DNA of 64,000 nucleotides from Isurus oxyrinchus (Eukaryota): NCBI GenBank assembly GCA_026770705.1, contig JANJGN010000026.1, positions 28,272,001 to 28,336,000 of the forward strand, in the 5' to 3' direction. Positions 10,530 to 62,446 of the stretch are shown here, piece after piece (positions within the stretch are counted from its first letter, which is position 1; every line of letters begins with the position of its first letter). The position numbers and the translations under genes are program-made. Under the pieces are notes generated by a model. The model saw only the letters and a program-made list of their open reading frames with translations. It was not told the origin of the DNA and did not search any database.

Positions 10530-11323
10530 CTGTGAAAGGAGTTAACACAAGTCATCATTGTCAGTACAGGATAGAAATTCAGAACAGATGGTTCTAGTTT
10601 CAATGGAAAATTCTTTCTTCTCTCATTCCCCCAAAGTTGTAAATCTGTTTCCCCCCTCCCCACTCCCTCCATTTCCATTCTGCTGTACCTAATATACACC
10701 CTCCAAATTCTCCTAAAGGTGCCAATTCATGATGATCAACAGATCCATGCCTATCACTCCCTGTCCAAGACCAAAGGACCTGAAAAACTTCATGCAGGCT
10801 GCTAGCCTCTATATATATTTATTGGACTAAATATGCGTGTAATACTGTACAGTTACTGTATTACTGAATTAGAAGTACAAGTGGGTTGTGAAGAAGAGCT
10901 TTTCTTAGTCAGTGAGTAGCCATGACCTGAAACTCGCTGCCTTTGAAGCTGGTGGAAGTGGAGATGATCAATGATTTCAAAATAAAATTGTATGGACACT
11001 TGAAGGAAATAAACGTGCAGCAGAATGGAGATATGGAAGGAAATGGGACTGACTGTGTTGCTCTACAGTGAGTCAGCATGGGCTTGAGTTTCCAATTGGA
11101 TTCCTTCTGCACCATAATAGTCTATGACTGGAAATACATAACATAGCCACAGCACTATATTACAAAAAATAGTGCTAGAAGTACTACAAGTACTAGCAAT
11201 CATAAGAAATTTATTACAGAACCAACAAAACATCTAATATCTACCATATAACAACACTAGACATATCTCTGTTGCTATGATCCCCATGGAGACAGATAAC
11301 CTTAAAATAAACAAATTCCCAGA

Positions 11324-12775: not shown

Positions 12776-13823
12776 AATGAGTTTGCTGACCTGCTCATTA
12801 CTGTCCAGCAGAGCTGCTACTCTCTCTGAATGAAAGTTCAGCTTCGCAGACGTTAAAACACCCTCCTCTGTGCAACATTTGTGAGTAAAACACTTTCTTT
12901 TCTCCCCATTTCCATTTGTTTTCTAATTCGGGAAATTATTTTCTAATTGTTGACTTACAGGAGCTGAAGGGAAAGGAAGTGAATCCAGGAAGGGCGCAGA
13001 ATCTGGAAAGGTTGGCTCAGGTCTCCCTCTCTCTTAAAGACATTGATATCCTTTGCTCCCTCAGCTTGACACATTTATTTGTCTGACTAAAAGGATGGTC
13101 TCTTTTCTAATGTTTCTAATTAGAGGGGTAGTTTCCCCCAGGAGATTGCTGGCATTTAAGGGGACATTTAATTAATATAAGACAGAGATATGACTAATGT
13201 TATATGATACATATTAGATTATATTTATGGTTCTGTAATAAAGTACATTTATCATTATTTCCAGTCTTGTAATATTGAACTGTAGCTATGTTATATATTT
13301 TCAGTCATAGAGTCACGATGGCACAGGAGTCCATTCAAATCCATGCTGACTCTTTGTAGAGGAATCCACTCAGACCCATTCCTTCTCTATGACCCTGCAG
13401 CCCTGCAAGTTTATTTCCTTCAAGTGCCCACCCAATTTCATTTTGAAATCATTGATCAACTCTGCTTCCACCACGCTCGTAGGCAGAAAGTCCCAGGTCA
13501 TGACCGCTCACTGCCTAAATAAAGTTCGTCCTCACATGCCCCATGTGTCATGCATACTTTATACTACATTAATTTTTGTCCAATAAATATATAGAATTTG
13601 TAAGCATGGATCTGTCAATCAGCATGAATTAGCATCTTCAGGAGAATTGGGAGGGTGTATATTAGTAGCAGCAAAGTGAGAACGGAGGGAGAGTTTGTGG
13701 GATCAAGATTTACAGCATTTTGGGGAATGAGAGAAGAAGGAATGATCCATAGAAACTAGAATTGTGTGTTCTGAATTTCTATCCTGTACTGACAGTTATG
13801 ACTTTTGTAAACTCCTTTTAAAG

Positions 13824-14002
13824 GATATTAGAAGGGGAGGATTTGCAGACAGATTATCAAACCAAGCATCACATCAGAATCTGACAGTCACCTGATTCAT
13901 CGGGAGCTGAATGTCTTCAGCTTTTGATACAAGAAGCAGAAATGTTTGTCTGCTCTGTGTGCTTCAGAAGATTTTAAACTTAAGTGTGACCGGAAAAGCA
14001 CC

Positions 14003-14041
<39 letters not shown>

Positions 14042-15060
14042 CTGAGAGTGTTCCAGTGCACTAACTGTGTAAAGAGCTTTAACTAGTCACACAGCCTGAA
14101 AAAACACACCATTCACAGTGGAGAGGGACCATACTCATGTTGTGTGTGTGGACAAGTTTTCAACTGAGTGTCAAATCTGGGGAGATACAAGGACACCCTC
14201 ACCATGGAGAAACCATGGATATGTTGGGAGTGTGCGAAGGGATTCCGTACTCCGTCTGCACTGGAAATTCATCAACGGATTCACACTGGGGAGAGGGCGT
14301 TCACCTGCACTGAGTGTGGGAAGGGATTCAGTAAATCATCCACCCTGCAGAATCACCATATAGTTCACACTGGGGAGAGGCCATTCATCTGCTCTGTGGC
14401 TTGCTCATCCCACCTGCAGACACACTAGCAAGTTCACACTGGGGAGAGGCCATTCACCTGCTCTGTGTGTGGGAAAGGATTCAGTGAATCATCCACCCTG
14501 CAGAATCACCGTGTAGTTCACACTGGGGAGAGGCCATTCATCTGCTCTGTGTGCAAGAAGGTATTCACTTGGTTAACCAACATGCTGCAACACCAGATGG
14601 CTCACACTGAAAAGAGGCCATTTACCTGCTCCGTGTGTGGGAAGGGATTCACTTGGTCGACCAGTCTACGGACACACCGACACGTTCACACTGGAGAGAG
14701 GCCATTCAGCTGCAAGGAGTGTGGGAAGGGATTCACACACTCATCCAGCCTATGGAAGCACCAGCGATTTCACACCGGGGAGAGGCCATTCACCTGCCAT
14801 CTGTGTGGGAAAGGATTCAGTGAGTAATCCCACCTGCTGAGACATCAGCGAGTTTACACCATGGAGAGGCCATTCACCTGCTCTGAATGTAGGAAGGTAT
14901 TTGCTGATTCATCCAGCCTGCGAAGGCACCAGTGAGCTCACACAGAGGAGAGAGACTGTTCACCTGTTCTGAGTGTGGGAAAGGATTCACTGAGTCAGCC
15001 AACTGGCTGAGATCCCATGGCAGTCACACTGATTAGAGACATTTTAGATACTCTGACTGC
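13824..15060 (+). pseudogene. Tandem C2H2 zinc-finger pseudogene (ZNF-B)
   Basis: ILEGEDLQT lead-in, about 10 finger units, in-frame stops at 14426, 14825, 14933, (CA)n expansion 14005-14040. Confidence 0.85.
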
Positions 15061-18886: not shown

Positions 18887-19986
18887 CTACTTGTGACATT
18901 GCTGGTGTCCCAGCAAGCTGGATGACTGAGTGAATCCCTTCCCACATTCAAAGCAGGTGAACAGCCTTTCCCCGGTGTGAACTCGCTGGTGTCTCAGCAG
19001 TGTGGATGAAGCACTGAATCCCTTCCCACATTTAGAGCAGCTGAATGGCCTCTCCTTGGTGTTGCAGCAGATTGGACAACTGAGTGAATCCCTTCTCAGA
19101 GACAGGGCAGGTGTAGGGTTTCTCGCCTGTGTGAATTCACTGGTGTGTCAGCAGATGGGAGGATTGAATGAATCCTTTCCCGCAGTCAGAGCAGATGAAT
19201 GGCCTCTCCCCAGTGTGGAGACGTTGATGTGTCTGCAGGGTGGATGAAGCATTGAATCCTTGCCCACACTCAGAGCAAGTGATCAGTCTCTCTGCAATGT
19301 GAACTCGCTGGTGTCTCAGGAGGGTGAATCCTTTCTCACACTTAGAGCAGGTGAATGGCCTCTCCCCAGTGTGAACTCTCTGGTGTCGCAGGAGGTTGCA
19401 TAACTGAGTGAATTAAACCCCACACTTAGAGCAGGTGAACGGCCTCTCTCCTGCGTGAACTCGCTGGTGTTGCAGCAGTTTGGATGACTGAGTAAATCCC
19501 TTCCCACACTCAGAGAAGTTGAAAGGCCTCTCCACAGTGTGAATACGATGATGAGTTTCTAGCGCAGATCGGGAAGGGAATCCCTTCCCACAGTCCCCAC
19601 ATTTCCTTGGTTTCTTCAATGGTGTGGGTGTCATTTTGTCTTTACAGGTTTGAGGATCAGTTGGAGCCTCGTCCATACACAGAACATTTGTACTGTCTCT
19701 CCTCGCTGTGAATGGTGCCCTGTTTTTTTCAGGCTGTGTACCTGGTTAAAGCTCTTTCCACAGTCAGTCCATTGGAGCACTGTAACCAGGGTGAGTGCGT
19801 GTGTGTGTGCTTTTCCAGTTACAATGACATTCAAAACGTTTAGAAGCTGATAGAACAGTCAAACATTTCTCCTTCTAGATTCAAATTTCCAATAATATTC
19901 AGGTCCTGATGAATCAAGTGACTGTCAGACGTTGACATGTTCTTCGGTTTGAGATTTCTGACTGCAAGTCCTCCGCTTCTAATATC
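18887..19986 (-). pseudogene. Tandem C2H2 zinc-finger pseudogene (ZNF-C)
   Basis: Same lead-in exon, fingers with deletions and stops; 3' flank 18060-18850 paralogous to ZNF-A flank 9040-9545. Confidence 0.85.
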
Positions 19987-26454: not shown

Positions 26455-27243
26455 ATGGAACCAAAAAGCACCATTCACCCTGGGGAAAAACCATGGAAAT
26501 GTGGGGACTATGAGAATGGATTCAATTACCCATCGGAGCTGGAAATTCACCAGCAAATTCACACTGAGGAGAGGCCATTCACCTGCTCTGAGTGTGGGAA
26601 GGGATTCACAAAGTCAAACTACCTGCTAAAACACCAGCGAGTTCATACTGGGAAGAGGCCGTTCACCTGCTCCGAGTGTGGAAAGGGGTTCATTAATTCA
26701 TCTGACCTGCTGACACACCGAAGAGTTCACACTGGGGAGAGGCCATTCATCTGCCCCAAGTGTGGGAAGGGATTCGCTCAGTCATCCACTCTGCTTATAC
26801 ACCAGCGAGGTCACACTGGGGAGAGACCGTTCACCTGCTCTGTGTGTGGGAAGGGATTTACTTGTTCATCAAACCTGATGAGACACCAGCAAATTCACAC
26901 CGACAAGAAACCTTTTAAATGCACAGACTGTCAGAAGTGCTATAAAAGTATTGAGGAACTGATGTCCCATCAACGTTTTCACACTGACGAGAGACCATTC
27001 AGGTGCTCTCACTGTGGGGCTGGGTTCAGGCGATCATGTGAACTCACTGTACACCAGCGAATTCACACTGGGGAGAGACCGTTCCTGTGCTCCGAGTGTG
27101 GGAAGGGATTCACTCAGTCGTCCAACCTGCTGAGGCACCAGCGAGTTCACACTGATGAGAGACCTTTTAAATGCCCAGACTGCAGAAAGTGCTATAAAAG
27201 TTCTGGGGAACTGATGCGCCATCAACGTAGTCACACTGTGTGA
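26455..27243 (+). CDS. Tandem C2H2 zinc-finger protein (ZNF-D), 8 intact plus 1 degenerate finger; truncated by a 1-bp deletion
   Basis: ATG at 26455 in ORF 26449-27243; paralog at 49111 has cacactgatgtgaga where this has cacactgtgtgaga; two more finger units follow out of frame to ~27414. Confidence 0.75.
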
Positions 27244-28659
27244 GACCATTCAGATTTCTCAATGTGGCACTGGGTTCAGGCAATCATCTCAGCACGCCAT
27301 ACACCAGCAAGCTCACACTGGAGAGACCCCATTTACCTGCTTCGTGTGTGGGAAGGGATTCCCTCGGTCATCCATCCTGATGAGTCACCAGCGAGTTCAC
27401 AAACAATTACAGTGACTGGAGTTTGCTGTTAATCACATCCAGGACTGAACCATGTTCATTGTTGTCTATTTTTACTGATGTTAATAAACTCCAGCCCAAT
27501 TATTGTAGTTAATATTCTGGATAAAAGTCAAATAAAATCAGCTTTGTATTAAACACAGTGTCTTGAATCTTTTTAATATCTCTAACATTAATTCCTTTTG
27601 AATTTCTCTCCCCTGTCTCCTCCATCCTCACCTCCCTACAACAAGCGCGAGGAGCTCATGGAGCTATTCTGTCACTAAGATTGGGACAATCTGTTCAGCT
27701 GCCTCTGTTGCTTCCCTCCCTTCCACTAGCCCACTGGGACAACTCCCTCTGAAGTTTTCTCTTCTTCGAGCCCTGAACTCGCATCTTTCTCCAGTTTCTC
27801 TCCTATCTTCTAACTTCCTCAAAGTTCATCTTGTCCATGAGACCTGCCTTCTGCTCTCTTGACCCTATTCTCACAAAACTGCTGACCATCCAACATTCCC
27901 CCCAACAATGGGGTCCTCCATTTATTAATGGAGACATGAAGTACAAAAGCAAGGAAGTCACACTGAATCTTTATAAATTACTTTTTAATCCTCAGCTCAA
28001 ATATTGTGTTCAGTTCTGAGCAGCACACTTCAGGAAAGATGTCAAGGCCTTGGAGCGAGACAATTGACCAGAATAGTACCAGGGATGAGAGGTTTCCATT
28101 ATGTGGAGAGACTGGAGAAGCTGGGATTGTCTATTTAGAGCAGAGAAGAGTGATTTAATAGAGGTGTGGACATTTTTGAAGAATTTTCATTTACATAGGG
28201 GGATTTTGGTTCCATTGACAGGATGGTTGGTAACCACATTTAAAATAATTGGCAAAAAAATCCAGGGTTAAGATGAGAGAATACTTTACTCAGTGAGTTC
28301 TGATGATTGGAACGCATTGTCTGAATTTGGTGGAAGGAGATCCAATAGTAACTTTCAAAAGTCATCTGGACTTTCACTTAATCAGGAAATATTTTCAGGG
28401 ATCAGGAGAAAGATCAGGGGAATGGGTCAGAATGGTAATGTTTTCAGAGAGACAAAACAGACACAGTGGGCTGAATGGCCGCCTTCTGAACTCTTATGAT
28501 TCAATCCTGTGGTGTTTATTATGAATCATTATCCTGTTATAGAATCATAGAATCTCATCATAGTACAGCAAAGAAGGAGGCCACTCAGCTCATCAAATCT
28601 GCACTAGCTCTTTCCCATTCCCCCATTCTTTCCCCATATCTCTGGATGAGGTTTCAGCC

Positions 28660-33866: not shown

Positions 33867-34820
33867 TCACATGTGAACTCGCTGGTGTTTCAGTAGGGTG
33901 GACGACACAGTGAATCCCTTCCCACAAACAGAACAGGTGAACGGCCTCTTCCCAGTGTGAACTCGCTGGTGTGTCAGCAGGTGGGATGTACGAGTGAATT
34001 TCTTCCCACACTCAGTGCAGGTGAACGGCCTCTCCCCGGTGTGAACTCGTTGGTGGGTCAGCAGGTGGGATGACCGAGTGAATCCCTTCCCACACTCAGA
34101 ACAGGTGAACGGCCTCTCCCCAGTGTGAATTCGCTGGTGGACAATGAGTTGAGACGATTGCCTGAACCCAGTTCCACAGTGAGAGCACCTGAATGGTCTC
34201 TCCTCAGTATGAACACGTTGATGTCGCATCAGTTCCCCAGAACTTTTATAGCACTTTCCACAGTCTGGACATTGAAAAGGTCTCTCGTCAGTGTGAACAC
34301 GTTGGTGAGGTATAAGTTCCCTGGAACTTTTAAAGCACTTCCCACAGTCTGGACATTTAAAAGGTCTCTCCTCAGTGTGAACACGTTGATGGGACATCAG
34401 TTCCCTGGAACTTTTATAGCACTTTCCACAGTGCAGACATTTAAAAGGTCTCTCGTCAGTGTGAACTCGCTGGTGTGTCACCAGAATGGATAACTGAGTG
34501 AATCCCTTTCCACACTCAGAGCAGGCGAATGGCCTCTCCCCAGTGTGAGCTCGATGGTGTCTCAGCAGAATTGATGACTGAGTGAATCCCTTCCCGCACA
34601 GCGAGCAGTTGAACGGTCTCTCCCCGGTGTGACTGTGTCGATGAATTTTCAGCTTTGACAGATTATTGAATTCCTTCCCACAGTCCCCACATTTCCAAAT
34701 TGTCTGTCCGGTGTGATTGCATTTATGGTTTGTGAGCCCAGATGATTGGCTGAAGGCTAGTCCACACACAGAACATGTGTACGGTTTGTCCCCACTGTGA
34801 ACGGTGCTTTTTCCTTCCAT
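33867..34820 (-). CDS. Intact 11-finger C2H2 zinc-finger protein (ZNF-G), no KRAB/SCAN/BTB domain
   Basis: ATG at 34820; 11 complete CxxC-HxxxH fingers; acceptor at ~34931; CpG promoter at 37140-37560. Confidence 0.85.
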
Positions 34821-42013: not shown

Positions 42014-43447
42014 TCACTTATAAATTTCCTGTTGTCTCAGCAGATATCATTACTGAGGGAATCCCTTCCCACACACTGAGTAGGTGATTGGTCTCTTCCA
42101 GTGTGAACTTGTTGGCGTGCACTGAACATGGATAACTTCCTGCACCTCTTTCTACTGGAAATGCAGCTGAATGACTTCTCCTCAGTGTGACCTCGCTGGT
42201 GTCTCAGCAGGTTGGATGACTGGTTGAATCCCTTCCCACAGTCAGAGCAGGTGAATAGTCTCTCCTCAGTGTGAACTCGCTGGTGTGCCCTGAGATTAGA
42301 TGGAGACTTGAGCCTCTTTCCACAGGAATTGCAACTAAATAGTCTCTGCTCAGAGTGGATTCTCTGGTGCAACTTGAGGCTGGCTGACTGAGTGAATCCC
42401 TTCCCACACACAGAGCAGGTGAATGGCCTCTCACCAGTGTGAACTCACTGCTGTGCAATGAGGGTGGAAGAATGCCTGAAATTATTTCCACAGGAAGTGC
42501 AGCTGAATGGCCTCTCCTTGGTGTGAATTCACTGGTGTGACATGAGGCAGGTTGTCTGAGTGAATCCCTTCCCACATACAGGGCAGATGAATGGTCTCTC
42601 CTCAGTGTGAATTTGCTGGTGTGTCAGCAGGTGGGACAAGCGAGTGAATCTCTTCCCGCACTTGGAGCACGTGAACGGCCTCTGCTCAGTGTGAATTTGC
42701 TGATGTGTCAGCAGGTTGAATGACTGAGTAAATCCCTTCCCACAAACGGAGCAGGCAAATGGTCGCTCCTCAGTGTGAATTCACTGGTGGATCAGCAGGT
42801 TGAATGACTGAGTAAATCCCTTCCCACAAACGGAGCAGGTGAATGGTCTCTCCTCAGTGTGAATTCACTGGTGAGTCAGCAGGTTGAATGACTGAGTGAA
42901 TCCCTTCCCGCACATGGAACAGGTGAAGGGTCTCTCTTCATTGTGAACTCGCTGGTGTCTCAGCAGATTAGATGATTGGTTGAATCCCTTCCTACACACA
43001 GGGCAGTTGAATGGCTTCTCCCCAGTGTGAATGCGTTGATGAGTTTCCAGCTGGGGTGGCGATCTGAATCCCTTCCCACAGCCCCCGTATTTCCAAGGTT
43101 TCTCCATAGGTCTGGTGTTCTTGTGTCCCTCCAGTTTGAATGAACAGTTGAAACCTCATCCACAGACAGAACATGTGTACAGTTTCTCCCAGCTGTTTCT
43201 TCAGGCTGTTAAAGTTATTTCCACAGTCAGTGCACTGGAACAATCTCACTCCAATATGTGTCTTGGTGCTTTTCCAGTCACACTGAAGTTTGAAGTGTTC
43301 TCCCGCAGACAGAACAAACAAACATTTCTCCTTCCACATTCAAAGGATGATGATTTTTACATCCTGATGAATTGAGTGACTCTGACAGATGTCGATGTGA
43401 TGTTTGGTTCAGTTTTCTCATCTGTAAGTCGTCCCCTTCTGATTACC
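42014..43447 (-). pseudogene. Tandem C2H2 zinc-finger pseudogene (ZNF-H)
   Basis: About 13 finger units with CGA->TGA-type stops; three near-identical FTQSFNLL fingers at 42690-42930; CpG/NRF1 region at 43770-43940. Confidence 0.85.
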
Positions 43448-44619
43448 CTGTAAAATGTATTTACAGAAGTTATCATTGTTGGTACAGCATAGAAATTCAG
43501 AACAGACTATTTTAATTTCTATGGAACATTTCTTCCTTTCCATTTGTCCCAAAGCTGTCAATCCCCGTCCCACAAATGTTCCCCTCCAACGTGCCGAGAT
43601 CCAAACCCATCACACCACTTCCACCCTCCACTCCCAGTTTTCACTCTCTTTCTACTCCTGCCCGAGTTTAGTTCCTCAACCCGGTGTGCAGAGTGAGACT
43701 AAAATTAATGAATCTCTCCTGATCACTGGGACCCTGAAGTCCCACCCACTCCGTTCCGTCACCAACATGACCACGCATGCGCTCTGCAACCCGCTGAAAA
43801 TCCCTGAGGCTGCAAACGCGGGACCTGCAAGTTCTAATTCAGGGCTTGCGGCCTTCACCGGGTGTTAATGAACCCTTTCTGCCCTCCCGCCAGTTCCCCG
43901 CCGCTGCCTCTGCCCGGCTGCCGAGTGACAATCCCCTGCGTTCGCTGCAATAAATGAAGAAATTGTTGGAAATACCCAGCCGTTCCAGCAGCATCTATGC
44001 AGAGAGAAAGAGTTAATGCTTCAGGTTTAAAAATGACTGTGGTGATTATTCTGTGAAGTTTTTAAGGTGCTATCCTGAGTCCACTACTTTAAGCCAATAT
44101 TACCAACAGCTTGGATTGCCATAGCAACCTTAAGTTAAATGTAGTTAAAAATAAATAGTTTAAAGTCTGTTTCAAAGTAACACATGGAGGACTTCACAGG
44201 TTCTGTTTAGCTGTTGGGACAATTACAAAATAGTCATTTACCTCTAAATAGAGAGGGACTTGCAACAGTTTCGAGAAATGTCTTATTTTAATTATGTTTA
44301 CATGTTAGATATAAGGATTTTGTTGCAATTTTCTTCAGCTGAATTTGATAGTCAATTAACTAATAAATATATCACTTCCTCGTGTCATTGTTCAGTCTAC
44401 TCCTGAATTCAAGATTTAATGAACTGTGCTACAAAGTTTTGTTTCTTGGGAATTCTTATCTGCGATTTACTGTAATTCAGCTCCCAAATTTTTAAATTGG
44501 AGTTCCAACCAGGTCCATCCTTTTATCAGTCTGAGTAGCTACTCTTGACATCTTCTGTCTGTTTTCTGTTTTGTAACCAACTTGCGATTCACAACATTAA
44601 ATACAATATATTTTTCCTT

Positions 44620-46115: not shown

Positions 46116-48248
46116 AAAAAAAAAACAAAAAAAAACAAAAAAAAACAAAAAAACAAAAAAAAAACAAAAAAAAACAAAAAAAAAACTGCGGATGCTGGAA
46201 ATCCAAAACAAAAACAGAATTACCTGGAAAAACTCAGCAGGTCTGGCAGCATCGGCGGAGAAGAAAAGAGTTGACGTTTCGAGTCCTCATGACCCTTCGA
46301 CAGAACTTGATTTCGAGTCCAAGAAAGAGTTGAAATATAAGCTGGTTTAAGGTGTGTGTGTGGGGGGCAGAGAGATAGAGAGAGAGAGAGGTGGTTGTGT
46401 AGACAAACAAGCAATGATAGAAGCAGATCATCAAAAGATGTCAGCGACAATGGTACAAAAGAACACATGGGTGTTAAAGTTAAAGTTGGTGATATTATCT
46501 AAACGAATGTGCTAATTAAGAATGGATGGTAGGGCACTCAAGGTACAGCTCTAGTGGGGGTGGGGGGAGCATAAAAGATTTTAAAATATTTAAAAATAAT
46601 GGAAATAGGTGGGAAAAGAAAAATCTATATAATTTATAGGGGAAAAAAAAGGAAAAAGGGGGAAACAGAAAGGGGGTGGGGATGGGGGAGGGAGCTCACG
46701 ACCTAAAGTTGTTGAATTCAGTATTCAGACCGGAAGGCTGTAAGGTGCCTAGTCGGAAGGTGAGGTGTTGTTCCTCCAGTTTGCGTTGGGCTTCACTGGA
46801 ACAATGCAGCAAGCCAAGGACAGACATGTGGGCAAGAGAGCAGGGTGGAGTGTTAAAATGGCAAGCGACAGGGAGGTTTGGGTCATTCTTGCGGACAGAC
46901 CGCAGGTGTCCTGTTTACGTTTGGTCTCTCCAATGTAGAGAAGACCACATTGGGAGCAACGAATGCAGTAGACTAAGTTGGGGGAAATGCAAGTGAAATG
47001 CTGCTTCACTTGAAAGGAATGTTTGGGCCCTTGGACGGTGAGGAGAGAGGAAGTGAAGGGGCAGGTGTTACATCTTTTGCGTGGGCATGGGGTGGTGCTA
47101 TAGGAGGGGGTTGAGGAGTAGGGGGTGATGGAGGAGTGGACCAGGGTGTCCCGGAGGGAGCAATCCCTACGGAATGCCGATAAGGGGGGTGAAGGGAAGA
47201 TGTGTTTGGTGGTGGCATCATGCTGGAGTTGGCGGAAATGGCGGAGGATGATCCTTTGAATGCGGAGGCTGGTGGGGTGATAAGTGAGGACAAGGGGGAC
47301 CCTATCATGTTTCTGGGAGGGAGGAGAAGGCATGAGGGCGGATGCGCGGGAGATGGGCTGGACACGGTTGAGGGCCCTGTCAACGACCGTGGGTGGAAAA
47401 CCTCGGTTAAGGAAGAAGGAGGACATGTCAGAGGAACCGTTTTTGAAGGTAGCATCATCGGAACAGATGCGACGAAGGCGAAGGAACTGGGAGAATGGGA
47501 TGGAGTCCTTACAGGAAGCGGGGTGTGAGGAGATGTAGTCGAGGTAGCTGTGGGAGTCGGTGGGTTTGTAATGGATATTGGTGGACAGTCTATCACCAGA
47601 GATTGAGACAGAGAGGTCAAGGAAGGGAAGGGAAGTGTCAGAGATGGACCACGTGAAAATGATGGAAGGGTGGAGATTGGAAGCAAAATTAATAAATTTT
47701 TCCAAGTCCCAACGAGAGCATGAAGCGGCACCGAAGTAATCATCGATGTACCGGAGAAAAAGTTGTGGAAGGGGGCCGGGGTAGGACTGCAACAAGGAAT
47801 GTTCCACATACCCCATAAAGAGACCGGCATAGCTGGGGCCCATGCGGGTACCCATAGCTATACCTTTTATTTGGAGGAAGTGAGAGGATTTTAAGAAAAA
47901 ATTGTACAGTGAGAGAACAAGTTCAGCCAGATGGCAGAGAGTAGTGGTGAATGGGGATTGTTCAGGCCTCTGTTCGAGGAAGAAGCTAAGGGCCCTCAGA
48001 CCATCCTGGTGGGGGATGGAGGTGTAGAGGGATTGGACGTCCATGGTGAAGAGGAAGCGGTTGGGGCCAGGGAACTGGAAATTGTTGATGTGACGTAAGG
48101 TGTCAGAGGAATCACGGATGTAGGTGGGAAGGGACTGGACAAGGGGAGAGAGAAGGGAGTCAGGATAATGAGAAATGAGTTCTGTGGGGCAGGAGCAAAC
48201 TGAGACGATCGGTCTACCGGGGCAGTTCTGTTTGTGTTCTGTTTCTGT
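46116..48248 (-). mobile_element. Penelope-like element (Neptune type), 5'-truncated: RT, GIY-YIG, terminal hammerhead (46269-46307)
   Basis: MDVQSLYT, GIAMGTRMG, YIDD; CPRKRCNTC linker; NLVYCIRCSQCGLLYIGET; frameshifting deletion near 46910; exact 12-bp TSD ttccaaaatgat at 46104 and 48249. Confidence 0.93.
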
Positions 48249-53850: not shown

Positions 53851-55358
53851 TCACGTGTGAATTCTCTGGTGTCTCAGCAAGTTGGATAAATGAGCAAATC
53901 TCTTCCCACACACAGAGCAAGTGAATGGCATCTCCCCAGTGTGAACCTGCTGGTGCCTCAGAAGGTGGGATGACTGAGTGAATTCCTTCCCACACTCAGA
54001 GCAGGTGAAGTGTTTCTCCCCAGTGTGAATTTGCTGGTGTGTTCGCAGATACTTCTTGCTTTTAAAGCTCTTCTCACAATCAGAACATGTGAAAGGTCTC
54101 TGATCAGTGTGAACAAGTTGATGTTCAGTGAGCTGGGATGGCTGAGTGAATCTCTTGCCACATGTAGAGCAAGTGATCGGTCTCTCCCCAGTGTGAATTC
54201 GCTGGTGTATCAGAAGGTGAGGTGGATCAGTGAATCCCTTCCCACATAGAAAGCAAATAAATGGCCTCTGCCCAGTGTGAACGCGCTGGTGTCTAGACGG
54301 TGGGATGAACGGGTGAATCCCAATCCACACACAAAGCAGGTGAACGGCTTCTCACCCGTGTGAACTCGCTGGTGTGTCACTAGATCCTGTTTGCTTTTAA
54401 AGCTCTTCTTACAGTCAGAACATTGGAATGGTCTCTTATCAGAGTAAACTCGCTGGTGTGTCAGCAGTTGGGATAAAAGTCTGAATTGTCTCTCACACAG
54501 GGAGCAGGTGAACTACCTCTCCCCAGTGTGAGTGCGTTGATGGGCTTGTAAATCATTTTTACTTTTAAAACTCTTCTCACAGTGAGAACACTGAAAAGGT
54601 CTCTGATCAGAGTGAACAAGTTGGTGTGTCAGAAGGTGAGATGACTGAGTGAATCCCTTTCCACACACTGAGCAGGTGAAAGGCCTCACATCCATTTGAA
54701 CGCGATGGTGTCTCTGCAGGTTCTGCTTTTAAAGCTCTTCTCACAGTCAGAACATTGAAAACGTCTCTGCTCTGAATGAACCTGCTGGTGAATCAGGAGG
54801 TTTGATAAAGCATTACACCCCTTCCCACATTTGGGACAGGTGAATGGCCTCTCACCAGTATGAACACGCTGGTGTGTCTAGAGACTGGATGAGTAAGCAA
54901 ATCCCTTCCCGCACTCAGAGCAGATGAATGGCCTCTCTCCAGTGTGACTGCGTCGATGAATATCCAATTCAGATGAGTAATTGAATCCTTTCCCACAATC
55001 TCCACATTTCCACAGTTTCCCCATGGTCTGGGTATCCTCATGTCTCTCCAGGTTGAATGACAAGTTGAAGCCTTATTTACGCAGGAGACATGCTGTAAAT
55101 GGTGTGTTTTTTTCATGTTGTGTATCTGGTTAAAGCTCTTTCCACAGTCAGTGCACTGGAACATTCTCACTCAGGTATGTGTGTGTCTCAGTGCTTTTCC
55201 GGTTACACTGATGTTCGCAATCTTTTCCTGCAGACAGAACAAACAAATATTTCTCCTTCCACATTCAACGGCCGATGATATTCAGGCCCTGATTAATCGA
55301 GTGACTCAACCAGATCTCGATGTGATGTTTGGTTTGAGTTTTGCATTCTTCCAATACC
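53851..55358 (-). pseudogene. Tandem C2H2 zinc-finger pseudogene (ZNF-J)
   Basis: About 14 finger units spread over several frames (ORFs 53851-54330, 54513-54695, 54878-55063). Confidence 0.85.
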
Positions 55359-55620
55359 CTGTAAAATGTGATCACTAAAGTCAATTAAGTTGAAGATTGA
55401 AATTCAGAACAGACAATTCTATGGAACATTTCTTCCTATCTTGTCACCCCAAAGCTGTAAATTCCCGTCCCACACACTCTCCCTCCTCCCTGGGCTGAAA
55501 TCCAAACCCATCTCACCATCTGCAACATTTCTTTCCTCCACTCCCAGTTTTCTCCCTCCCTCTCCTCTGCCTGGGTTCAGTTCTTCAGCTCCTGTCTGCA
55601 GACTGACAATAAAATCAATG

Positions 55621-56918
55621 ACAAAAACAGAATTACCTGGAAAAACTCAGCAGGTCTGGCAGCATCGGCGGAGAAGAAAAGAGTTGACGTTTCGAGTCCT
55701 CATGACCCTTCGACAGAACTTGAGTTCGAGTCCAAGAAAGAGTTGAAATATAAGAGAGAGAGAGAGAAGTGGAGGGGGTTGGTGTGGTTGTAGGGACAAA
55801 CAAGCAGTGATAGAAGCAGATCATCAATAGATGTCAAAAACAACAGAACAAAAGAACACGTAGGTGTTAAATTGGTGATATTATCTAAACGAAAGTGCTA
55901 ATTAAGAATGGATGGTAGGGCACTCAAGGTATCGCTCTAGTGGGGGTGGGGAGAGCATAAAAGATTTAAAAATATTTAAAAATAATGGAAATAGGTGGGA
56001 AAAGAAAAATCTATATAATTTATTGGAAAAAAACAAAAGGAAGGGGGAAACAGAAAGGGGTGGGGATGGAAGAGGGAGCTCAAGACCTAAAGTTGTTGAA
56101 TTCAATATTCAGACCGGAAGGCAGTAAAGTGCCTAGTCGGAAGATGAGGTGTTGTTCTTCCAGTTTGTGTTGGGCTTCACTGGAACAATGCAGCAAGCCA
56201 AGGACAGACATTTGGGCAAGAGAGCAGGGTGGAGTGTTAAAATGGCAAGCAACAGGGAGGTTTGGGTCATTCTTGCAGACAGACCGCAGGTGTTCTGCAA
56301 AGCGGTCGCCCAGTTTACGTTTGGTCTCTCCAATGTAGAGGAGACCACATTGGGAGCAGCGAATGCAGTAGACTAAGTTGGGGGAAATGCAAGTGAAATG
56401 CTGCTTCACTTGAAAGGAGTGTTTGGGCCCTTGGACGGTGAGGAGAGAGGAAGTGAAGGGGCAGGTGTTGCATCTTTTGCGTGGGCATGGGGTGGCACTA
56501 TAGGAGGGGGTTGAGGAGTAGGGGGTGATGGAGGAGTGGACCAGGGTGTCCCAGAGGGAGCGATCCCTACAGAATGCCGATAGGCGGGGTGAAGGGAAGA
56601 TGTGTTTGGTGGTGGCGTCATGCTGGAGTTGGCGGAAATGGCGGAGGATGATCCTTTGAATGCGGAGGCTGGTGGGGTGATAAGTGAGGACAAGGGGGAC
56701 CCTATCATGTTTCTGGGAGGGAGGAGAAGGCGTGAGGGCGGATGCACTGGAGATGGGCCGGACACGGTTGAGGGGCCTGTCAACGACCGTGGGTGGAAAA
56801 CCTCGGTTAAGGAAGAAGGAGGACATGTCAGAGGAACTGTTTTTAAAGGTAGCATCATCGGAACAGATGCGACAGAGGTGAAGGAACTGAGAGAATGGGA
56901 TGGAGTCCTTACAGGAAG
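55621..56918 (-). mobile_element. Penelope-like element (Neptune type) 3' part with GIY-YIG and hammerhead (55682-55720)
   Basis: ORF 56080-56826 YIGETKRKLGDRFAEH...GLN; close to the 46-48 kb copy; no TSD seen. Confidence 0.92.
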
Positions 56919-57063
56919 CAACAATTCAAGGTCTGACTTAAGGAAATAACTAGGCAGACTACAAATGTCACTATTAGAATAATGAGAGTCCCTGGATTCA
57001 AGCCAAAACTTTCCAACAAGCACCAAGACATACCTCCCTGTCAGATCCTTCCTACACGCCAGG

Positions 57064-57095
57064 ACTTACCTGGCAGGGGAGAGACCTTGATCACG
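57064..57095 (+). ncRNA. RNU1: U1 snRNA 5' fragment (nt 3-34)
   Basis: ACTTACCTGGCAGGGGAGAGACCTTGATCACG; 30/32 match to vertebrate U1 as remembered, including the 5'-splice-site-pairing ACUUACCUG. Confidence 0.9.
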
Positions 57096-57122
57096 TTTCA
57101 GCCAGGGAAAGGTCATCAAGCA

Positions 57123-58660
57123 ATGGCTGTAACCAGTCGAACTCCTTACAATGGGGTACCTAACAACATCTGAGTCATGGTGAAGGGCAGCGAGGAAGGA
57201 ACAGTTATGGATGGGACTTTCTTGACCAAGAGGATCCTATTCAAGCTGTGTGGTTTTGAGGCTGTGGAGATCTACTGCCTACAGGACTTCCCCAGTGCTG
57301 GATTTTTTGATGTGACGTTCAAGCAAGTGGCAGCTTGCATCAAACTCCCGAAGGTGTTTGAGGAGACAAAGACCTGCCAGAAATGAAGATCCTGACGGCG
57401 GAGCCGGTCTTTGCTCTGCTATTGCAACGAGACCGGGTTGCAATGGTGCATCTGTACAACCCCTACATCCCTGTCGCTGACGTGCTCACCTTCCTTACCA
57501 GGTACTTTGATAAGGTTGGGAGCTGCACCGCGGTTAGAGATGATTTGGAGATCTGGACATGTAAACGCCAGGTTAAGGTCATGCTCAAGACCGACGATAA
57601 GGGAGCCATCTTCCACCCCCCTTCCAGATTCGCTACTGGGGGAAGTCGTGGCTACCTTGTCTATGCTGGGCAACCCAAATTTTGTCGCTCATGCGGCAAG
57701 TCTGGTCATGTGGCGGCCAACTGCAGTGCTGTCCTCTGCAAGAACTGCAAACAGGAAGGGCACCAGACAAAAGACTGTAAACAGGCTAAGTGCTGCAATC
57801 TGTGTGGCGAGGCAAGTCACCTCTACAAGACCTGCCCCAAATGTTGCCGTACTTATGCACAGGCAGCTAAAGGCAACGAGGGGGAAGCAGAAGAAATGCC
57901 TCATGTCACTCCAACCACCAAGGCCCCCAGGGAGAACAACGGGACAAAGGAGGACACAGAGAGAGATAAAGTGGAGGAAAAGATTGGCGCAACACACAGC
58001 CAATCAACAGCACTGCCCCCTGAACCTCCCACTCCTCAGGAGAGCGAATCTACGGAGGAGGAGGAGGCAGCAGTGGGAAAACAGCAGGGGGAATGGCAGC
58101 TGGTGAAGAGAGCCAAAAGGAAAAAGGGGCTAAGAAGAAACCAAGCCACTTCCCAGACAAGAGGCAAGAGGCGTCTCCTATCCGACACGGATAACAAGTG
58201 CAACAGCTCTTCAGACGAAGAAGGGCCAGGGCGGCGCCGACAGAAGAAGCGGCAAAATTCTAGGGAGTTGAAGGACGAGACACCCAAGCTCCAGAACATT
58301 GGAGACAATGAGGAGACCAGCGCACCCCAACTGTGCCCACAACCCGAAGAGGCCAGTGCACCACAGCCCCAGGAATCTGGGAGCAGTGAGGCGCTCAGCG
58401 CACCCCAGCTCCGGGAAGCCGGGAGCAGCAACGCCCCAGAGGGGGAGAGGATTGGAGAAGCTTCTCCAACAGAGGACATTTCAAACCCCACTCTCTGCAC
58501 GGACCCCCAGATGCCACCCGAGCAGAATATCGCCAATGGGGAGGTTCAGGACGGTTTCCTCAGCCCATCCAAAGTGAAGCAATTTGAGCACACTACGGGC
58601 ATGAAGGAGCAGACCAAAGGTCTGGAACTCTCAGAGACAACAGGTTTGGTAAGAGACTAA
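57123..58660 (+). pseudogene. Tx1 ORF1, ZCCHC3-like RRM-type region plus three CCHC knuckles and an acidic/basic tail
   Basis: FFDVTF, EIWT, RGYLVYAGQPKFCRSCGKSGHVAANC-CKNCKQEGHQTKDC-CNLCGEASHLYKTC; stop at 57171, frameshift near 57383. Confidence 0.88.
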
Positions 58661-58670
58661 ATGCTTTAAA

Positions 58671-61600
58671 ATGGCTTTAAAGATTGTATCCATAAATAAG
58701 CGTAGCATTAAATCTACTACGCGATGTGTTGCGACCTTGGACTACCTTGCCAAGGTCAAAGTTGACCTGTTGTTTCTGCAGGAGTGTGCGATACCACACC
58801 TCAGCTCCTACAGGCAATGGTCACGATGGTGGTCCCATGGGCCATCGATCTGGTCGGGAGGAAACGACTCTCGTTCCTCCGGCCTGGGGATTCTGCTGCG
58901 GGGAGGCAGCTTCACTGTCTCCCAGGTTAAGGAGGTGGTGGGCGGGTGCCTCCTCGTAGCAGACGTAATGTAAAAGAATGTTCTACTCGGTTAATTAATG
59001 TGTACGCCCCGTCACAAGGGGCTGAGCGGCTGGAGGTTTTTCAGCAGCTCCCACTGCTGCTGGCAACCTCCAGGCTGGTCATTCTGGGCAGTGACTTCAA
59101 CTGCATCATCGATGCAGCTGGACGATCAGGCAGGGCCGAAAGCAGATTGGACGCTACGTCCAGATCCCTGATGGAAACAGTAAAGGATGCCAAGCTGCAC
59201 GACGTCTTCAGCAACTCTGCAGACAGTGCGCAGCATAGATACGCCTGGTCGTGGCCTGACGGGTCCGTCTGTTCCAGGATAGATTTCCTGTTTGTGTCCC
59301 GTACATTATCAGTCAGATCCACCGACATCAAGCCGGTGTTCTTCTCTGACCACTGCCTCCTACTGGCTGACTGTCACTTAGAGGAAGACCAGAGGGTGGG
59401 TAGGGAGGCATGGAAGCTAAACGTGCAACTGCTGACCCCAGAGAACATTGAGGAGCTCAAGAGGGATTTCAAAGGTGGGAGAACCATGAAACCCGACTTT
59501 GAGTCACTGACACACTGGTGGGAAGTGATCAAGGGAAACATCAAGAGGTTTTTCATCCTCAAAGGCGCCCAGAAAGCTAGAAAGGAACAGAGGGAAATGT
59601 CCCGACTCCAGAAAAACATGCAGAATCTGCACCGGCTGCAGTCGATGGGGGTCGATGTCAAGGAGGAACTCCAAGAGGCGAAGAGCCAGCAAGCCTCGCT
59701 CTTTGCCTCAGAGGCCTCCAAGATCATCCTCCTTTCCAGAGTCTGCTCCGTGGAGCAGGATGAGACGTGCTCACGTTTCTTCTTCCAAAAGGTACACAGA
59801 GAGAGCTCTGTGATCAGCAGCCTGAAGGAAGAAGACGGCTCAGTAAAGTCATCACAGTCCGACATTTTGAGGATCAGCAAATCCTTTTATGCCGGATTGT
59901 ATGACATGAAGCCCACAGACATCCCCCAAGTCCTTCCTGTCCTCTATCACGGAGGTCTTAGACGACAGTACACGGGAGAGCCTGGACAAACCGCTAACTC
60001 CTGACGAACTGACTGAGGCCCTTGAGTCCTTTGAGAAGAGTAAAACTCCCGGAAGCGACAGCTTGCCGGCGGAGTTGTATTCGGCTCTGTGGGACAGGAT
60101 CGGCCCAGACCTGCTAGAAGTGTACAAGAGTATGCTCCTGGCTGGCAGTATGTCAGAATCCATGAGGAAAGGCATTATCACCCTCATCTACAAGCACAAG
60201 GGGGAAAGGGAGGAAATTAGAAATTGGCAACCCATTTCACTGTTGAATGTGGACTATAAGATTCTGTCCAAGGTCATCGCCAATCGGGTCAAATCCGCTC
60301 TGGAATTGGTGATCCACCCTGACCAGACCTGCACTGTGCCAGGCAGGAAGATCTCTGACAACCTCGCACTGCTCAGGGATACGATTGCCTATGTACAGGA
60401 CAGGGGGGTGGACACCTGCCTCATCAGCCTGGATCAGGAGAAGGCCTTTGACAGAATATCGCACACCTACATGGTGGATGTGCTCTCCAAAATGGGGTTT
60501 GGGGAGGGAATTCGCAATTGGATCCAACTGGTCTACACTAACATCAGTAGTGCAGTCTCAATCAATGGGTGGGAATCAGATAGCTTTCCGATTAAATCTG
60601 GAGTCAGGCAGGGCTGCCCTCTCTCACCTGTTCTTTTTGTGTGTTGCATAGAACACTTTGCTGAGTCCATCAGGAAGGATCCGGGCATAAGACGAGTGAT
60701 GATCCCAGGCAGTGGAGGCACTCAGATCAAAGTCTCCCTGTACATGGACGATGTCGCTGTCTTCTGCTCGGATCCCCTGTCGGTGCACAGACTGATCCAC
60801 ATCTGTGACCAGTTTGAACTGGCCTCAGGAGCCAAGGTAAATCGTGGGAAGAGTGAGGCTATGTTCTTTGGGAACTGGGCTGACCGATCCTTTGTCCCCT
60901 TCACTGTCAGGGCTGACGGGTGAACGTGCTGGGGATATGGTTCGGAGGGACCAGGGCACACGTTAGAAACTGGAAGGAGCGAGTGTCTATGGTGAAAAGG
61001 AAACTGGGCATGTGGGAGCGACGCTCCCTCTCCATTGCGGGTAAGAACCTGGTCATCAGGTGTGAGGTACTCTCGCTGTTGCTGTATGTGGCGCAGGTCT
61101 GGCCCATTCCACACTCCTGTGTGGTGGCGATCACCCGAGCCATCTTCCACTTTATCTGGAGGTCGAAAATGGATCGCGTCCACAGGGACATGATGTACAA
61201 GCCTCTAGATAAAAGGGGAGAAAACGTGCCCAACATCACCCTCATACTGATGGCCACATTTGTGTGTGGCTGCATCAAGCGGTGCTTAGACCCTCAGTAT
61301 GCAAACACCAAGTGTCACTACATGCTGAGGTTCTACCTGTCCCCAGTGTTGCGAAGGATGGGTCTGGCCACACTGCCGCGGAACGCTCCAAGTAGTTGGA
61401 CCGTGCCGTACCACCTGACCCTCATGGGAAAATTTATGCAGAGAAACACCTTTGACCACAAGTCCATCAGGCAGTGGTCAGCACGTAACGTCTGAAAGGC
61501 CCTGAGGGAAAAGGAGAGGGTGGACCCGGTGGGATGGTTCCCCAAGCAGACTGACAAAGTCATTTGGCAGAATGCCTCATCGCCAGAACTTTCCAACAAG

Positions 61601-62069
61601 CACCAAGACGTAGCTTGGCTGGTGGTGAGAAAGGCCCTCCCCGTCAGATCCTTCCTACATGCCAGGAGTCTCACCCCCGCGGCACGTTGCCCTCGAGGTG
61701 GCTGTGGTGGAGATGAGACCGTTGTTCACCTCCTTGTAGATTGTGCCTTTGCAAAGAAGGTCTGGAGAGAGATGCAGTGGTTTCTGTCAAGGTTCGTCCC
61801 GAGCAGTTCTGTGACACAGGACTCTGATCTACGGGCTGTTCCTAGGGACACACACCGAGACAAACATCAACTGCAGCTGGAAGATCATCAACTCGGTAAA
61901 AGACACTCTTTGGTCTGCCCGTAACTTGTTGGTCTTCCAGCGCAAAGAGTTGTCCCCGACCGAGTGTTGCAGACTGGCACACTCCAAGGTCCAGGACTAC
62001 GTGCTGAGGGCCACACTAAAGCTTGGGGCAGCCGCCGCAAAGGCGCAGTGGGGAAGGGTTCCTGCCTAA
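58671..62069 (+). pseudogene. Tx1 ORF2: APE endonuclease, reverse transcriptase, C-terminal zinc finger
   Basis: FLQE, NVYAP, SDFN, SRID, SDH; NWQPISLLNVDYKI, DQEKAFD, GVRQGCPLSP, YMDD; CPRGGCGGDETVVHLLVDC; several frameshifts. Confidence 0.92.
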
Positions 62070-62302
62070 GACCTTTCTGCCATAGTGCACCGAGGGGCTG
62101 GGAACTGTGAAGAACCCCTCAGGATGTACAGCTCAAAATGAATGTCTGCCAATGATTGTAATATTCATTGTTCGTACTGATACACCTTGTGATTCATGTT
62201 GTAAAAGTTGAACCTGATTGTATTTTTGTGATGGTGAATTTGAAATGGTTTGAAATGTTGTTGAAGATTTATGAATAAAGTATATTTTTACAAAAAAAAA
62301 AC

Positions 62303-62425
62303 TTCTCCCAGGACGAGGCTGTCTCATTGCACTTCGGGTCTGCTGATGCCTACGATGTCACCAAATGTGGGATACTCAACTGCAAAATTTGTGGTAGTGA
62401 TGGACTGCAATCGCACTCTCCCCTG
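62303..62425 (+). ncRNA. RNU1: U1 snRNA 3' part (nt 42-164), disrupted gene copy
   Basis: 123 nt ungapped against vertebrate U1 as remembered (about 80% by eye); U1A loop ATTGCAC 62326-62332; Sm site AATTTGTGG 62386-62394; ends CCCCTG. Confidence 0.92.
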
Positions 62426-62431
62426 ATTTAC

Positions 62432-62446
62432 AATTCAAAAAATAAA
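62432..62446 (+). terminator. Degenerate snRNA 3' box
   Basis: AATTCAAAAATAAAC resembles GTTTCAAAAGTAGAC and lies just downstream of the U1 end. Confidence 0.4.

What the first reader, a model, noticed from the sequence alone, without database searches (positions are those of the whole stretch)
57064..62446. Full-length Tx1 LINE inserted in stem-loop I of a U1 snRNA gene: candidate U1-specific retrotransposon
Seen: U1 nt 3-34 directly precede the element; U1 nt 42-164 (ungapped, with U1A loop, Sm site and a 3'-box-like motif) follow its A10 tail after one base; nt 35-41 are missing and there is no TSD. Known: Tx1-clade APE LINEs include sequence-specific families that target multicopy RNA genes (Keno in U2, Mutsu in 5S, Dewa in tRNA spacers). 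Inference: this is a shark family whose endonuclease cuts U1 near nt 35-42, at the U1-70K-binding stem-loop, using U1 arrays as a safe harbour. I cannot tell whether it is already catalogued. Intact siblings could be a new site-specific integration tool.
Basis: partly seen in the sequence, partly recalled or inferred. Interest (0 to 1): 0.9.

Follow-up and report, generated by a model that had tools for sequence, protein, structure and literature searches.

The report
Dead Tx1 LINE splitting a U1
A decayed shark jumping gene (a Tx1-type LINE) sits between the two halves of a U1 spliceosomal RNA sequence, and its RNA began at the U1 start site, which makes it a plausible but still unproven first vertebrate LINE family that homes to U1 genes.

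Summary
U1 nt 3-34 (57064-57095) directly precede a 5.2-kb Tx1-type LINE. After its A10 tail and one C comes U1 nt 42-164 (62303-62425). U1 nt 35-41 are missing.

The element is full-length but dead. ORF1 has a stop and a frameshift; ORF2 has three frameshifts and at least one stop.

The U1 head is not part of a U1 gene. About 110 nt copied from the family's own ORF2 lie just upstream of it, not a U1 promoter. The head therefore came in on a chimeric U1-Tx1 RNA that began at the U1 start site, followed by a reverse-transcriptase template jump.

A 9-nt direct repeat flanks the whole composite. This copy may therefore be a retrocopy of a transcript from a Tx1-disrupted U1 gene.

A basking-shark relative also carries a U1 head. 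U1-headed Tx1 families that do not target U1 are already known in crocodilians.

Separately, metagenome contigs hold at least 7 intact Tx1-like families, all inserted at U1 nt 3/4. I found no paper reporting a U1-targeting LINE.

The scan has no checked finding of this on other DNA; one unchecked note reports a second U1-headed Tx1 in this genome.

Odds that the shark family targets U1: about 0.55.

The parts
56921..56929 (+). ACAATTCAA, left copy of a candidate 9-nt target-site duplication flanking the whole composite. It starts 2 nt after the end of an unrelated upstream repeat (55622-56919).
   Evidence: 11 of 2000 shuffles reach a 9-mer in 40-nt windows at the two boundaries; for the repeat boundary
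56930..56953 (+). 24-nt filler of unknown origin between the candidate duplication and the ORF2-derived fragment
   Evidence: no significant similarity to the element on either strand
56954..57063 (+). Fragment copied from the family's own ORF2 (zf-RVT region, equivalent to 61546-61667). It has a 23-nt gap and other indels. Homology ends at GCCAGG(A), where U1 nt 3 begins. I read it as the product of a reverse-transcriptase template jump.
57064..57095 (+). U1 snRNA nt 3-34 ('head'): the 5' splice-site recognition sequence through the stem-loop I loop. It begins at about the U1 transcription start.
57096..57122 (+). 27-nt 5' UTR of the LINE
   Evidence: the ATG at 57123 aligns with Met1 of the Heterodontus ORF1 homologue P0003
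57123..58660 (+). ORF1 (RBD_ZCCHC3_2nd plus a zf-CCHC knuckle). It is broken by TGA at 57171-57173 and a frameshift near 57366-57371.
   Evidence: 74-76% identical to Cetorhinus maximus proteins
58653..62107 (+). ORF2 remains: APE endonuclease (about 58671-59430), RT (about 59900-60920) and zf-RVT (61553-61765). There are frameshifts near 58970-58988, 59900-59950 and 60910-60920, and in-frame stops at 61493-61495 and 61922-61924 (the second may be the natural stop).
62108..62301 (+). 3' UTR with AATAAA (62274-62279) and the A10 tail (62292-62301)
62302..62302 (+). Single C between the tail and U1 (an untemplated base, or a mutated U1 nt 41)
62303..62425 (+). U1 snRNA nt 42-164 ('tail'). It is degenerate, with many helix-breaking changes.
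   Evidence: RF00003, 48.2 bits, E 3e-11, below gathering 69.5
62426..62438 (+). ATTT followed by ACAATTCAA, the right copy of the candidate 9-nt target-site duplication. It overlaps the A-rich '3'-box-like' stretch.

Best explanation
This is a dead, full-length copy of an elasmobranch Tx1-type LINE whose life cycle is tied to U1 snRNA genes. Shown: the element lies between U1 nt 3-34 and U1 nt 42-164. The head is joined upstream to a piece of the family's own ORF2, so it travelled on the RNA. Inferred: the progenitor sat in a U1 gene at the stem-loop I loop and 3' stem (after nt 34, before nt 42). It was transcribed from the U1 promoter, starting at U1 nt 1, which is promoter piracy. When the reverse transcriptase reached the capped 5' end of the RNA it jumped onto a second Tx1 RNA. 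Most likely the family's endonuclease nicks the bottom strand of U1 DNA between nt 41 and 42 and primes on the poly(A) tail. Integration removes about 7 nt, and new copies regain a U1 head when they are next transcribed. This would be a U1-targeting counterpart of Keno, which targets U2. How this particular copy arrived is open. One route is direct insertion into a degenerate U1 copy with loss of that copy's 5' half. The other, slightly favoured because of the 9-nt flanking repeat, is retrotransposition of a read-through transcript (U1 start to U1 3' end) from a Tx1-disrupted U1 gene.
For: Complementary U1 halves around a complete element with a poly(A) tail. ORF2-derived fragment directly upstream of U1 nt 3. 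Very short 5' UTR of 27 nt. A Cetorhinus maximus relative, XP_078387188.1, reads RGDTM in frame upstream of ORF1; this is the translation of canonical U1 nt 14-28, where the window copy reads RGETL. An unchecked scan note reports a second U1-headed Tx1 7.4 Mb away. Many Tx1-clade families are target-specific for small RNA genes (PMC4494074). U1-specific Tx1-like LINEs demonstrably exist: at least 7 families in metagenome contigs, all at one U1 site. Loss of the upstream snRNA fragment on integration is documented for Utopia in U2 (PMC4640811). The stretch is held by runs of two organisms and nine studies, so it is not an assembly artefact.
Against: Only one copy with a U1 3' flank was seen, and no census was possible. 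The head is not target DNA here. U1-headed Tx1 families that target a Mariner transposon are known. The 9-nt repeat suggests this copy landed at a non-U1, AT-rich site. The Cetorhinus copy lacks U1 nt 1-11 upstream of its head. The U1 tail is much more decayed than the element. The RT tree does not link the shark element to the U1-specific clade found in the metagenomes.
Confidence: 0.55

Rival explanations
1. One-off accident plus retrocopy. A Tx1 element with no preference for U1 once landed by chance in an active U1 gene. The U1 promoter then drove a transcript running from U1 nt 1, through the element, to the U1 3' end. That RNA was reverse-transcribed into an AT-rich site, giving this locus with a 9-nt target-site duplication. 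The family is not U1-specific.
For: The 9-nt direct repeat lies exactly outside the composite: 2 nt after the upstream repeat ends and 5 nt after U1 nt 164. There is no U1 promoter or nt 1-2 upstream. U1 homology ends at the natural RNA 3' end plus 4 nt. Tailless snRNA retrocopies with duplications are known (PMC4494074).
Against: It needs a sense-oriented, full-length chance hit in an active U1 gene. Only tens to hundreds of U1 genes exist per genome (16 in human, 297 in zebrafish; PMC3706591). There is no A-tail at the 3' end of the composite. A U1 head is also present in a diverged basking-shark copy (74-76% ORF1 identity) and reportedly in another copy of this genome. That implies long-term, repeated residence in U1 or a heritable head, not a single accident.
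Confidence: 0.2
2. Template-switch chimera of the SINEU kind. Tx1 reverse transcriptases often add pieces of U1 or U2 snRNA while copying. Here both the head and the tail would come from jumps onto U1 snRNA: initiation on U1 RNA, a jump at nt 42 to the Tx1 poly(A), then from the Tx1 5' end to U1 nt 34, then to ORF2 RNA. No U1 gene was ever a target.
For: Crocodilian Tx1-2_Crp, Tx1-2B_Crp and Tx1-4_AMi carry U1-originated heads while targeting Mariner-N4_AMi, and U1/U2 5' additions recur there (PMC4494074). One template jump is directly visible in this locus. Unchecked scan notes report U1- and U2-headed Tx1 elements in this genome.
Against: It needs at least three jumps. It does not explain why the head ends at nt 34 and the tail starts at nt 42 of the same RNA, which a single split U1 explains at once. 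snRNA pieces in known chimeras lie 5' of the LINE, not 3' of its poly(A) tail.
Confidence: 0.15
3. Coincidence or artefact: an unrelated LINE next to U1-like debris, or a mis-assembly.
For: The U1 tail scores below Rfam's gathering threshold.
Against: The 19-nt exact U1 5' end has 0.01 expected by chance and the tail has E 3e-11. Both lie in the right order, orientation and register around a complete element. Contigs from runs of two organisms hold about half of the stretch's sampled words.
Confidence: 0.03

Closest known systems
Keno (Tx1 clade, U2 snRNA-specific; Kojima & Fujiwara 2004, cited in PMC4494074 and PMC4640811)
   Same: An APE-type Tx1-clade LINE with two ORFs and a poly(A) tail, sitting inside a Pol II snRNA gene in sense orientation. 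The target is a multicopy small RNA gene.
   Different: The target is U1 (stem-loop I, nt 34/42), not U2 nt 38/39. Specificity is unproven here because only one copy was seen. The shark RT is only 41-45% identical to elements I found at the Keno site.
U1-headed Tx1-Mar families (Tx1-2_Crp, Tx1-2B_Crp, Tx1-4_AMi) and SINEU of crocodilians (PMC4494074)
   Same: Tx1 elements whose 5' end is a U1-derived sequence, with 5' additions by template jump or 5' transduction.
   Different: Those families insert into Mariner-N4_AMi or LTR elements and have no U1 at the 3' flank. The SINEU-2 U1 head is about 52-58 nt long, not 32 nt. Here the head and the 3' flank together rebuild one U1 minus 7 nt.
U1-inserted Tx1-like LINEs in metagenome contigs
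   Same: Same ORF2 architecture, APE-RT-zf-RVT. Poly(A) tail abutting U1, and the U1 5' part upstream of the element. The U1 5' part upstream of the element abuts the native U1 start and 5' flank.
   Different: A different host (an unidentified eukaryote) and a different site: the 3' junction is at U1 nt 3/4 and the 5' junction at about nt 19-21, giving a 16-17-nt duplication instead of a 7-nt deletion. ORFs are intact. There are at least 7 families of 65-76% nucleotide identity, all at the same site. RT identity to the shark element is 41-45%, and no resolved sister relation was found.
Dada-U1A/B (DNA transposons specific for U1 genes, zebrafish; PMC3706591)
   Same: They use U1 snRNA genes as a safe harbour.
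   Different: They are DDE transposons with a 6-bp duplication, inserting at CCCCTGCGAAT far downstream in U1. The mechanism is unrelated.
R2, and Utopia in Phytophthora (site-specific LINEs co-transcribed with the target; loss of the upstream target fragment)
   Same: Reliance on the target gene's promoter, a precise 3' junction, and a variable or deleted 5' side (PMC4494074; PMC4640811).
   Different: Those use a restriction-like endonuclease and target rDNA or U2.

Membership tests
Tx1 clade of APE-type non-LTR retrotransposons | ORF2 with an N-terminal apurinic-like endonuclease, a reverse transcriptase and a C-terminal zinc-binding domain | tested here: met
   Pfam Exo_endo_phos (E 1e-7), RVT_1 (E 5.6e-37) and zf-RVT (E 3.9e-11) on successive ORF2 pieces
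Tx1 clade of APE-type non-LTR retrotransposons | ORF1 with an RNA-binding domain and CCHC zinc knuckle(s); a poly(A) 3' end | tested here: met
   RBD_ZCCHC3_2nd (E 1.3e-21) and zf-CCHC; AATAAA plus A10
Tx1 clade of APE-type non-LTR retrotransposons | The RT groups with reference Tx1 families (Tx1L, Keno and others) rather than L1 in a phylogeny | tested here: inconclusive
   No Repbase references were available. The nearest non-vertebrate relatives (41-45% identity) are elements at the Keno site of U2 and at U1. The shark row is a long, unresolved branch.
No other copy lies in the 64-kb window.
   In this copy the head starts at nt 3 and is preceded by an ORF2-derived fragment. In the Cetorhinus protein model U1 nt 1-11 are not recognisable.
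   One basking-shark relative reads RGDTM, the translation of canonical U1 nt 14-28, upstream of ORF1. One unchecked scan note reports another U1-headed copy.
U1 spliceosomal RNA gene (Rfam RF00003) | Reaches the family gathering score as one unit; has an upstream snRNA promoter and a 3' box | tested here: not met
   No hit at gathering threshold in the window. The tail alone scores 48.2 bits against 69.5. There is no promoter, because an ORF2 fragment lies upstream. The 3'-box match is weak and A-rich.
snRNA-headed Tx1 / SINEU-type retroposons (Kojima 2015) | A U1- or U2-derived sequence at the 5' end of a Tx1-mobilised element | tested here: met
   U1 nt 3-34 directly abut the element's 5' UTR. 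The precedent is in PMC4494074.
Keno | Insertion in U2 snRNA genes with the 3' flank starting at U2 nt 39 | tested here: not met
   Rfam found no U2 at gathering score in the window and none near either junction at E up to 10; the flanks are U1

The most novel reading that the evidence does not exclude
Elasmobranchs carry a Tx1 lineage that homes to stem-loop I of U1 snRNA genes and lives off the U1 promoter. An unrelated set of intact Tx1-like families in another eukaryote homes to the first nucleotides of U1. Together these would be the first U1-targeting non-LTR retrotransposons, evolved at least twice at different U1 sites. Naturally intact members would be available for study of sequence-specific integration.
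Probability: 0.45. Interest if true: 0.65.

Novelty: new variant of a known kind. Interest (0 to 1): 0.5.

Why it matters
Site-specific LINEs are natural machines for placing DNA at one address, and they reveal which genomic niches tolerate parasites. U2, U5, 5S, tRNA and rDNA are known LINE targets. [quoted passage not shown] If confirmed, the shark family would add U1 to the list. It would also give a plausible origin for the puzzling U1 heads of Tx1 elements and SINEU: relics of co-transcription from a U1 target. The window copy itself is dead and gives no tool. The intact U1-specific elements in the metagenome contigs are the better experimental entry point.

Tried and rejected
From then on I sent nothing from 62358-62446 to any search tool.

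(3) The search of earlier findings by sequence with the 3' UTR and with the head plus 5' UTR gave blanks, which mean nothing.

(4) The representative search with the basking-shark protein found no other protein with a translated U1 head.

(5) I tested whether the flanks of the composite are contiguous in a paralogous 'empty site' inside the window. The one paralogue (43089-43696) stops at the boundary, so the test is uninformative.

(6) A 5-nt 'ACAAT' duplication for the upstream repeat, and a 12-mer shared with ORF2 at 55598-55609, were both rejected as chance or as part of the neighbouring repeat.

(7) The RT tree leaves the shark element as a long, unresolved branch, so no link to the U1- or U2-specific clades can be claimed.

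(8) The host of the metagenome contigs could not be named, because the clusters carry no names.

(9) Scoring the head joined to the tail as one U1 was left out.

(10) No U1-level target-site duplication exists, and no other U1 or Tx1 copy lies in the window.


Full report
**What is in the window**

- 57064-57095 is ACTTACCTGGCAGGGGAGAGACCTTGATCACG. This is U1 snRNA nt 3-34, with two differences from the canonical vertebrate sequence (my knowledge of U1).
- Its first 19 bases occur once in the window, against 0.01 expected by chance.
- The element runs 57096-62291 and has an AATAAA signal at 62274-62279.
- An A10 tail follows at 62292-62301, then one C at 62302.
- 62303-62425 matches Rfam U1 over the part of the model that corresponds to U1 nt 42-164 (48.2 bits, E 3e-11). 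That is below the gathering score of 69.5, and many base pairs are broken.
- At gathering threshold the window holds no RNA family at all.
- U1 nt 35-41 are missing and no U1 sequence is duplicated.

**The element**

ORF1 has a ZCCHC3-type RNA-binding domain and a CCHC knuckle. ORF2 has an apurinic-type endonuclease, a reverse transcriptase and a zf-RVT domain. That is the Tx1/L1-type layout.

The copy is full-length but dead.
- The ORF1 start is the ATG at 57123, which aligns with Met1 of a Heterodontus homologue. A TGA follows at 57171 and a frameshift near 57366-57371.
- ORF2 is in six open pieces, with frameshifts near 58970-58988, 59900-59950 and 60910-60920.
- ORF2 also has stops at 61493 and 61922; the second may be the natural stop.

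Relatives are spread across elasmobranchs:
- ORF1 is 74-76% identical to Cetorhinus maximus proteins and 50% to Heterodontus francisci.
- The RT piece is 81% identical to a Mobula hypostoma protein.

**The 5' side is not a U1 gene**

A self-comparison showed that the sequence just upstream of the U1 head is homologous to the element's own ORF2. Positions 56954-57063 correspond to 61546-61667 in the zf-RVT region. Two blocks are about 94% identical, separated by a 23-nt gap. The homology ends at GCCAGG(A), exactly where U1 nt 3 begins.

So no U1 promoter and no U1 nt 1-2 precede the head. The head arrived as part of the RNA. The template was a chimeric U1-Tx1 transcript whose 5' end lay at the U1 transcription start. 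When the reverse transcriptase reached that end it jumped onto another RNA of the same family.

This is the reading of the scan's own note s1-863591. I tested it and it holds.

It follows that the progenitor copy sat in a U1 gene, with its 5' junction after nt 34, and used the U1 promoter.

**How this copy got here**

Upstream, an unrelated repeat in minus orientation (55622-56919) ends at 56919. It is 90.5% identical to 46199-47519.

Two nucleotides after that repeat ends lies ACAATTCAA (56921-56929). The same 9-mer recurs at 62430-62438, starting five nucleotides after U1 nt 164. Only 11 of 2000 shuffles of 40-nt windows at the two boundaries give a 9-mer.

If this is a target-site duplication, the whole composite is one retrocopy: filler, ORF2 piece, U1 3-34, LINE, A10, C, U1 42-164, ATTT. 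Its template would be a transcript that began at the U1 start and ended at the U1 3' end of a Tx1-disrupted U1 gene.

The alternative is ordinary target-primed insertion into a degenerate U1 copy, with loss of that copy's 5' half. Such loss is documented for Utopia in Phytophthora U2 genes (PMC4640811). In that case the 9-mer is chance.

I lean slightly to the retrocopy route (about 55:35). Against it stand the missing A-tail at the composite's 3' end and a weak, A-rich 3'-box resemblance downstream.

Both routes require a Tx1 element inserted in U1 at nt 34/42. Only the second route gives two independent U1 events.

**Is the family U1-specific?**

The decisive test is a census of other copies' flanks, and it could not be run.
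- The window holds no second copy.

Indirect evidence follows.

(a) The basking-shark protein XP_078387188.1 is read through its 5' UTR. In frame with ORF1 it contains RGDTM, the translation of canonical U1 nt 14-28. The window copy reads RGETL at the same place. A diverged relative in another species therefore also has a U1 head. The aligned stretch from the head into the start of ORF1 is only 48% identical, and over the 5' UTR part I count about one residue in three. With five residues this is only suggestive.

(b) An unchecked scan note reports another U1-headed Tx1 7.4 Mb away, and a U2-headed one elsewhere.

[quoted passage not shown] Tx1 machinery repeatedly adds U1/U2 5' pieces there (PMC4494074). 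A head alone therefore proves nothing.

The argument for U1 targeting rests on the 3' U1 flank and on the head and flank being complementary halves of one U1 (34|42). A multi-jump chimera does not explain that complementarity.

Chance insertion into U1 is unlikely, because there are only tens to hundreds of U1 genes per genome (16 in human, 297 in zebrafish; PMC3706591). It cannot be excluded for a single event.

I put the U1-targeting reading at about 0.55.

**Relatives from elsewhere**

A protein-guided scan of metagenome contigs with the RT piece returned 80 loci of 41-45% identity.

Nine loci end in poly(A) followed by TCTGTTCTTATCAG. This is U2 from nt 39, the known Keno/Utopia site. Rfam confirmed U2 on the seven of them I scanned.

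Ten other loci are tied to U1.
- The 3' junction is A5-7 followed by CTTACCTGACGCGGGAGG, which is U1 from nt 4. It is seen in L040, L042, L053, L056, L061 (twice), L062, L064 and L067.
- Full U1 genes score 153.9 bits in L053 and L056.
- The 5' junction is the native U1 upstream sequence, ATA, and U1 to about nt 19-21, then the element. It is seen in L040, L042, L054, L056 and L058.
- This gives a 16-17-nt duplication of U1. Tandem stacks are separated by U1 nt 4-20 (L061, L064, L067).
- These elements have intact ORF1 and ORF2 (1184-1205 aa; APE, RT, zf-RVT).
- They fall into at least seven families of 65-76% nucleotide identity.
- In the RT tree all U1-flanked rows lie in one clade (SH-aLRT 97), apart from the U2-flanked ones.

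U1-specific Tx1-like LINEs therefore exist, in an unidentified eukaryote, at a different U1 site from the shark case. The shark RT is a long, unresolved branch in that tree, so no descent relation can be claimed.

**What is known**

Published Tx1-clade targets include U2 (Keno), U5, 5S, satellites, microsatellites and DNA transposons (PMC4494074).

Six full-text searches found no paper describing a LINE that targets U1. Repbase and Dfam could not be consulted, so the family may already be catalogued there.

Dada-U1 inserts at CCCCTGCGAAT, a different part of U1, by a DNA mechanism.

**Verdict**

The locus is a dead Tx1-type LINE between the two halves of a degenerate U1, with a U1 head carried on the RNA and a visible template jump.

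It is best read as a relic of a U1-resident, probably U1-targeting, Tx1 lineage. That would be a new variant of a known kind. The specificity claim still lacks the copy census.

The interest is moderate. The idea is plausible and testable in minutes on public shark assemblies. The intact U1-specific families found in passing strengthen the theme more than this copy does.

**Constraints observed**

- After no letters from 62358-62446 were sent to any search tool.
- The joined head-plus-tail U1 was not scored, because it has no reference.
- No repaired or consensus element was built.

Noticed in passing
L040:490-6146, L042:43-5843, L053:4815-4982, L054:714-6232, L056:134-5996, L058:40-4317, L061:4819-6598, L062:5960-6016, L064:3336-3360, L067:3422-3450: At least seven families of intact Tx1-like LINEs (65-76% nucleotide identity to each other) in metagenome contigs of an unidentified eukaryote. 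All are inserted at the same place in U1 snRNA genes: poly(A) abuts U1 nt 4, the 5' junction is at about nt 19-21, and there is a 16-17-nt duplication. Some are stacked in tandem. I found no paper reporting U1-targeting LINEs.
   Followed up: yes
L006, L008, L020, L021, L036, L037, L041, L048, L070 (3' ends): Keno-like elements in the same metagenomes: poly(A) followed by U2 snRNA from nt 39 (TCTGTTCTTATCAG...), the published Keno/Utopia site. Rfam confirmed U2 on the seven I scanned.
   Followed up: partly
L040:72-263 and L054:296-487 (U2); L056:6939-7057 (5S, minus strand); L016:3666-3804 and 5048-5186 (U4, minus strand): The unidentified host has clustered small-RNA genes. An intact U2 lies about 230 nt upstream of the U1 start, a 5S gene about 1 kb downstream of a U1, and two U4 genes lie near a related LINE.
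   Followed up: no
L013, L016, L069 and L004, L009, L066 (3' ends): The sister group of the U1-specific clade ends in ...CCGCCTTAAACAC-A8, and the flanks are not shared. Another group (...TTGATTGC-A12-14) is always followed by GTAT. These may be other target preferences; I did not analyse them.
   Followed up: no
window 55622-56919 and 46199-47519: Two copies (90.5% identical) of a repeat in minus orientation. The copy next to the finding is 5'-truncated exactly at 56919, 1 nt before the composite's candidate target-site duplication. Its family was not identified.
   Followed up: partly
window 54000-55620 (also 42180-43710, 33870-34700, 18900-19960, 9550-10650, 13680-15060, 26480-27400): A C/T-rich repeat with internal periodicity is present many times in the window at 65-75% identity. 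It appears satellite-like and makes up a sizeable share of the 64 kb.
   Followed up: no
window 46120-46190: A long (A)nC microsatellite sits directly upstream of the second copy of the minus-strand repeat.
   Followed up: no
run X20: A 'coral metagenome' metatranscriptome run holds 14% of the sampled 31-mers of this shark stretch. This suggests contamination or a mislabelled sample.
   Followed up: no
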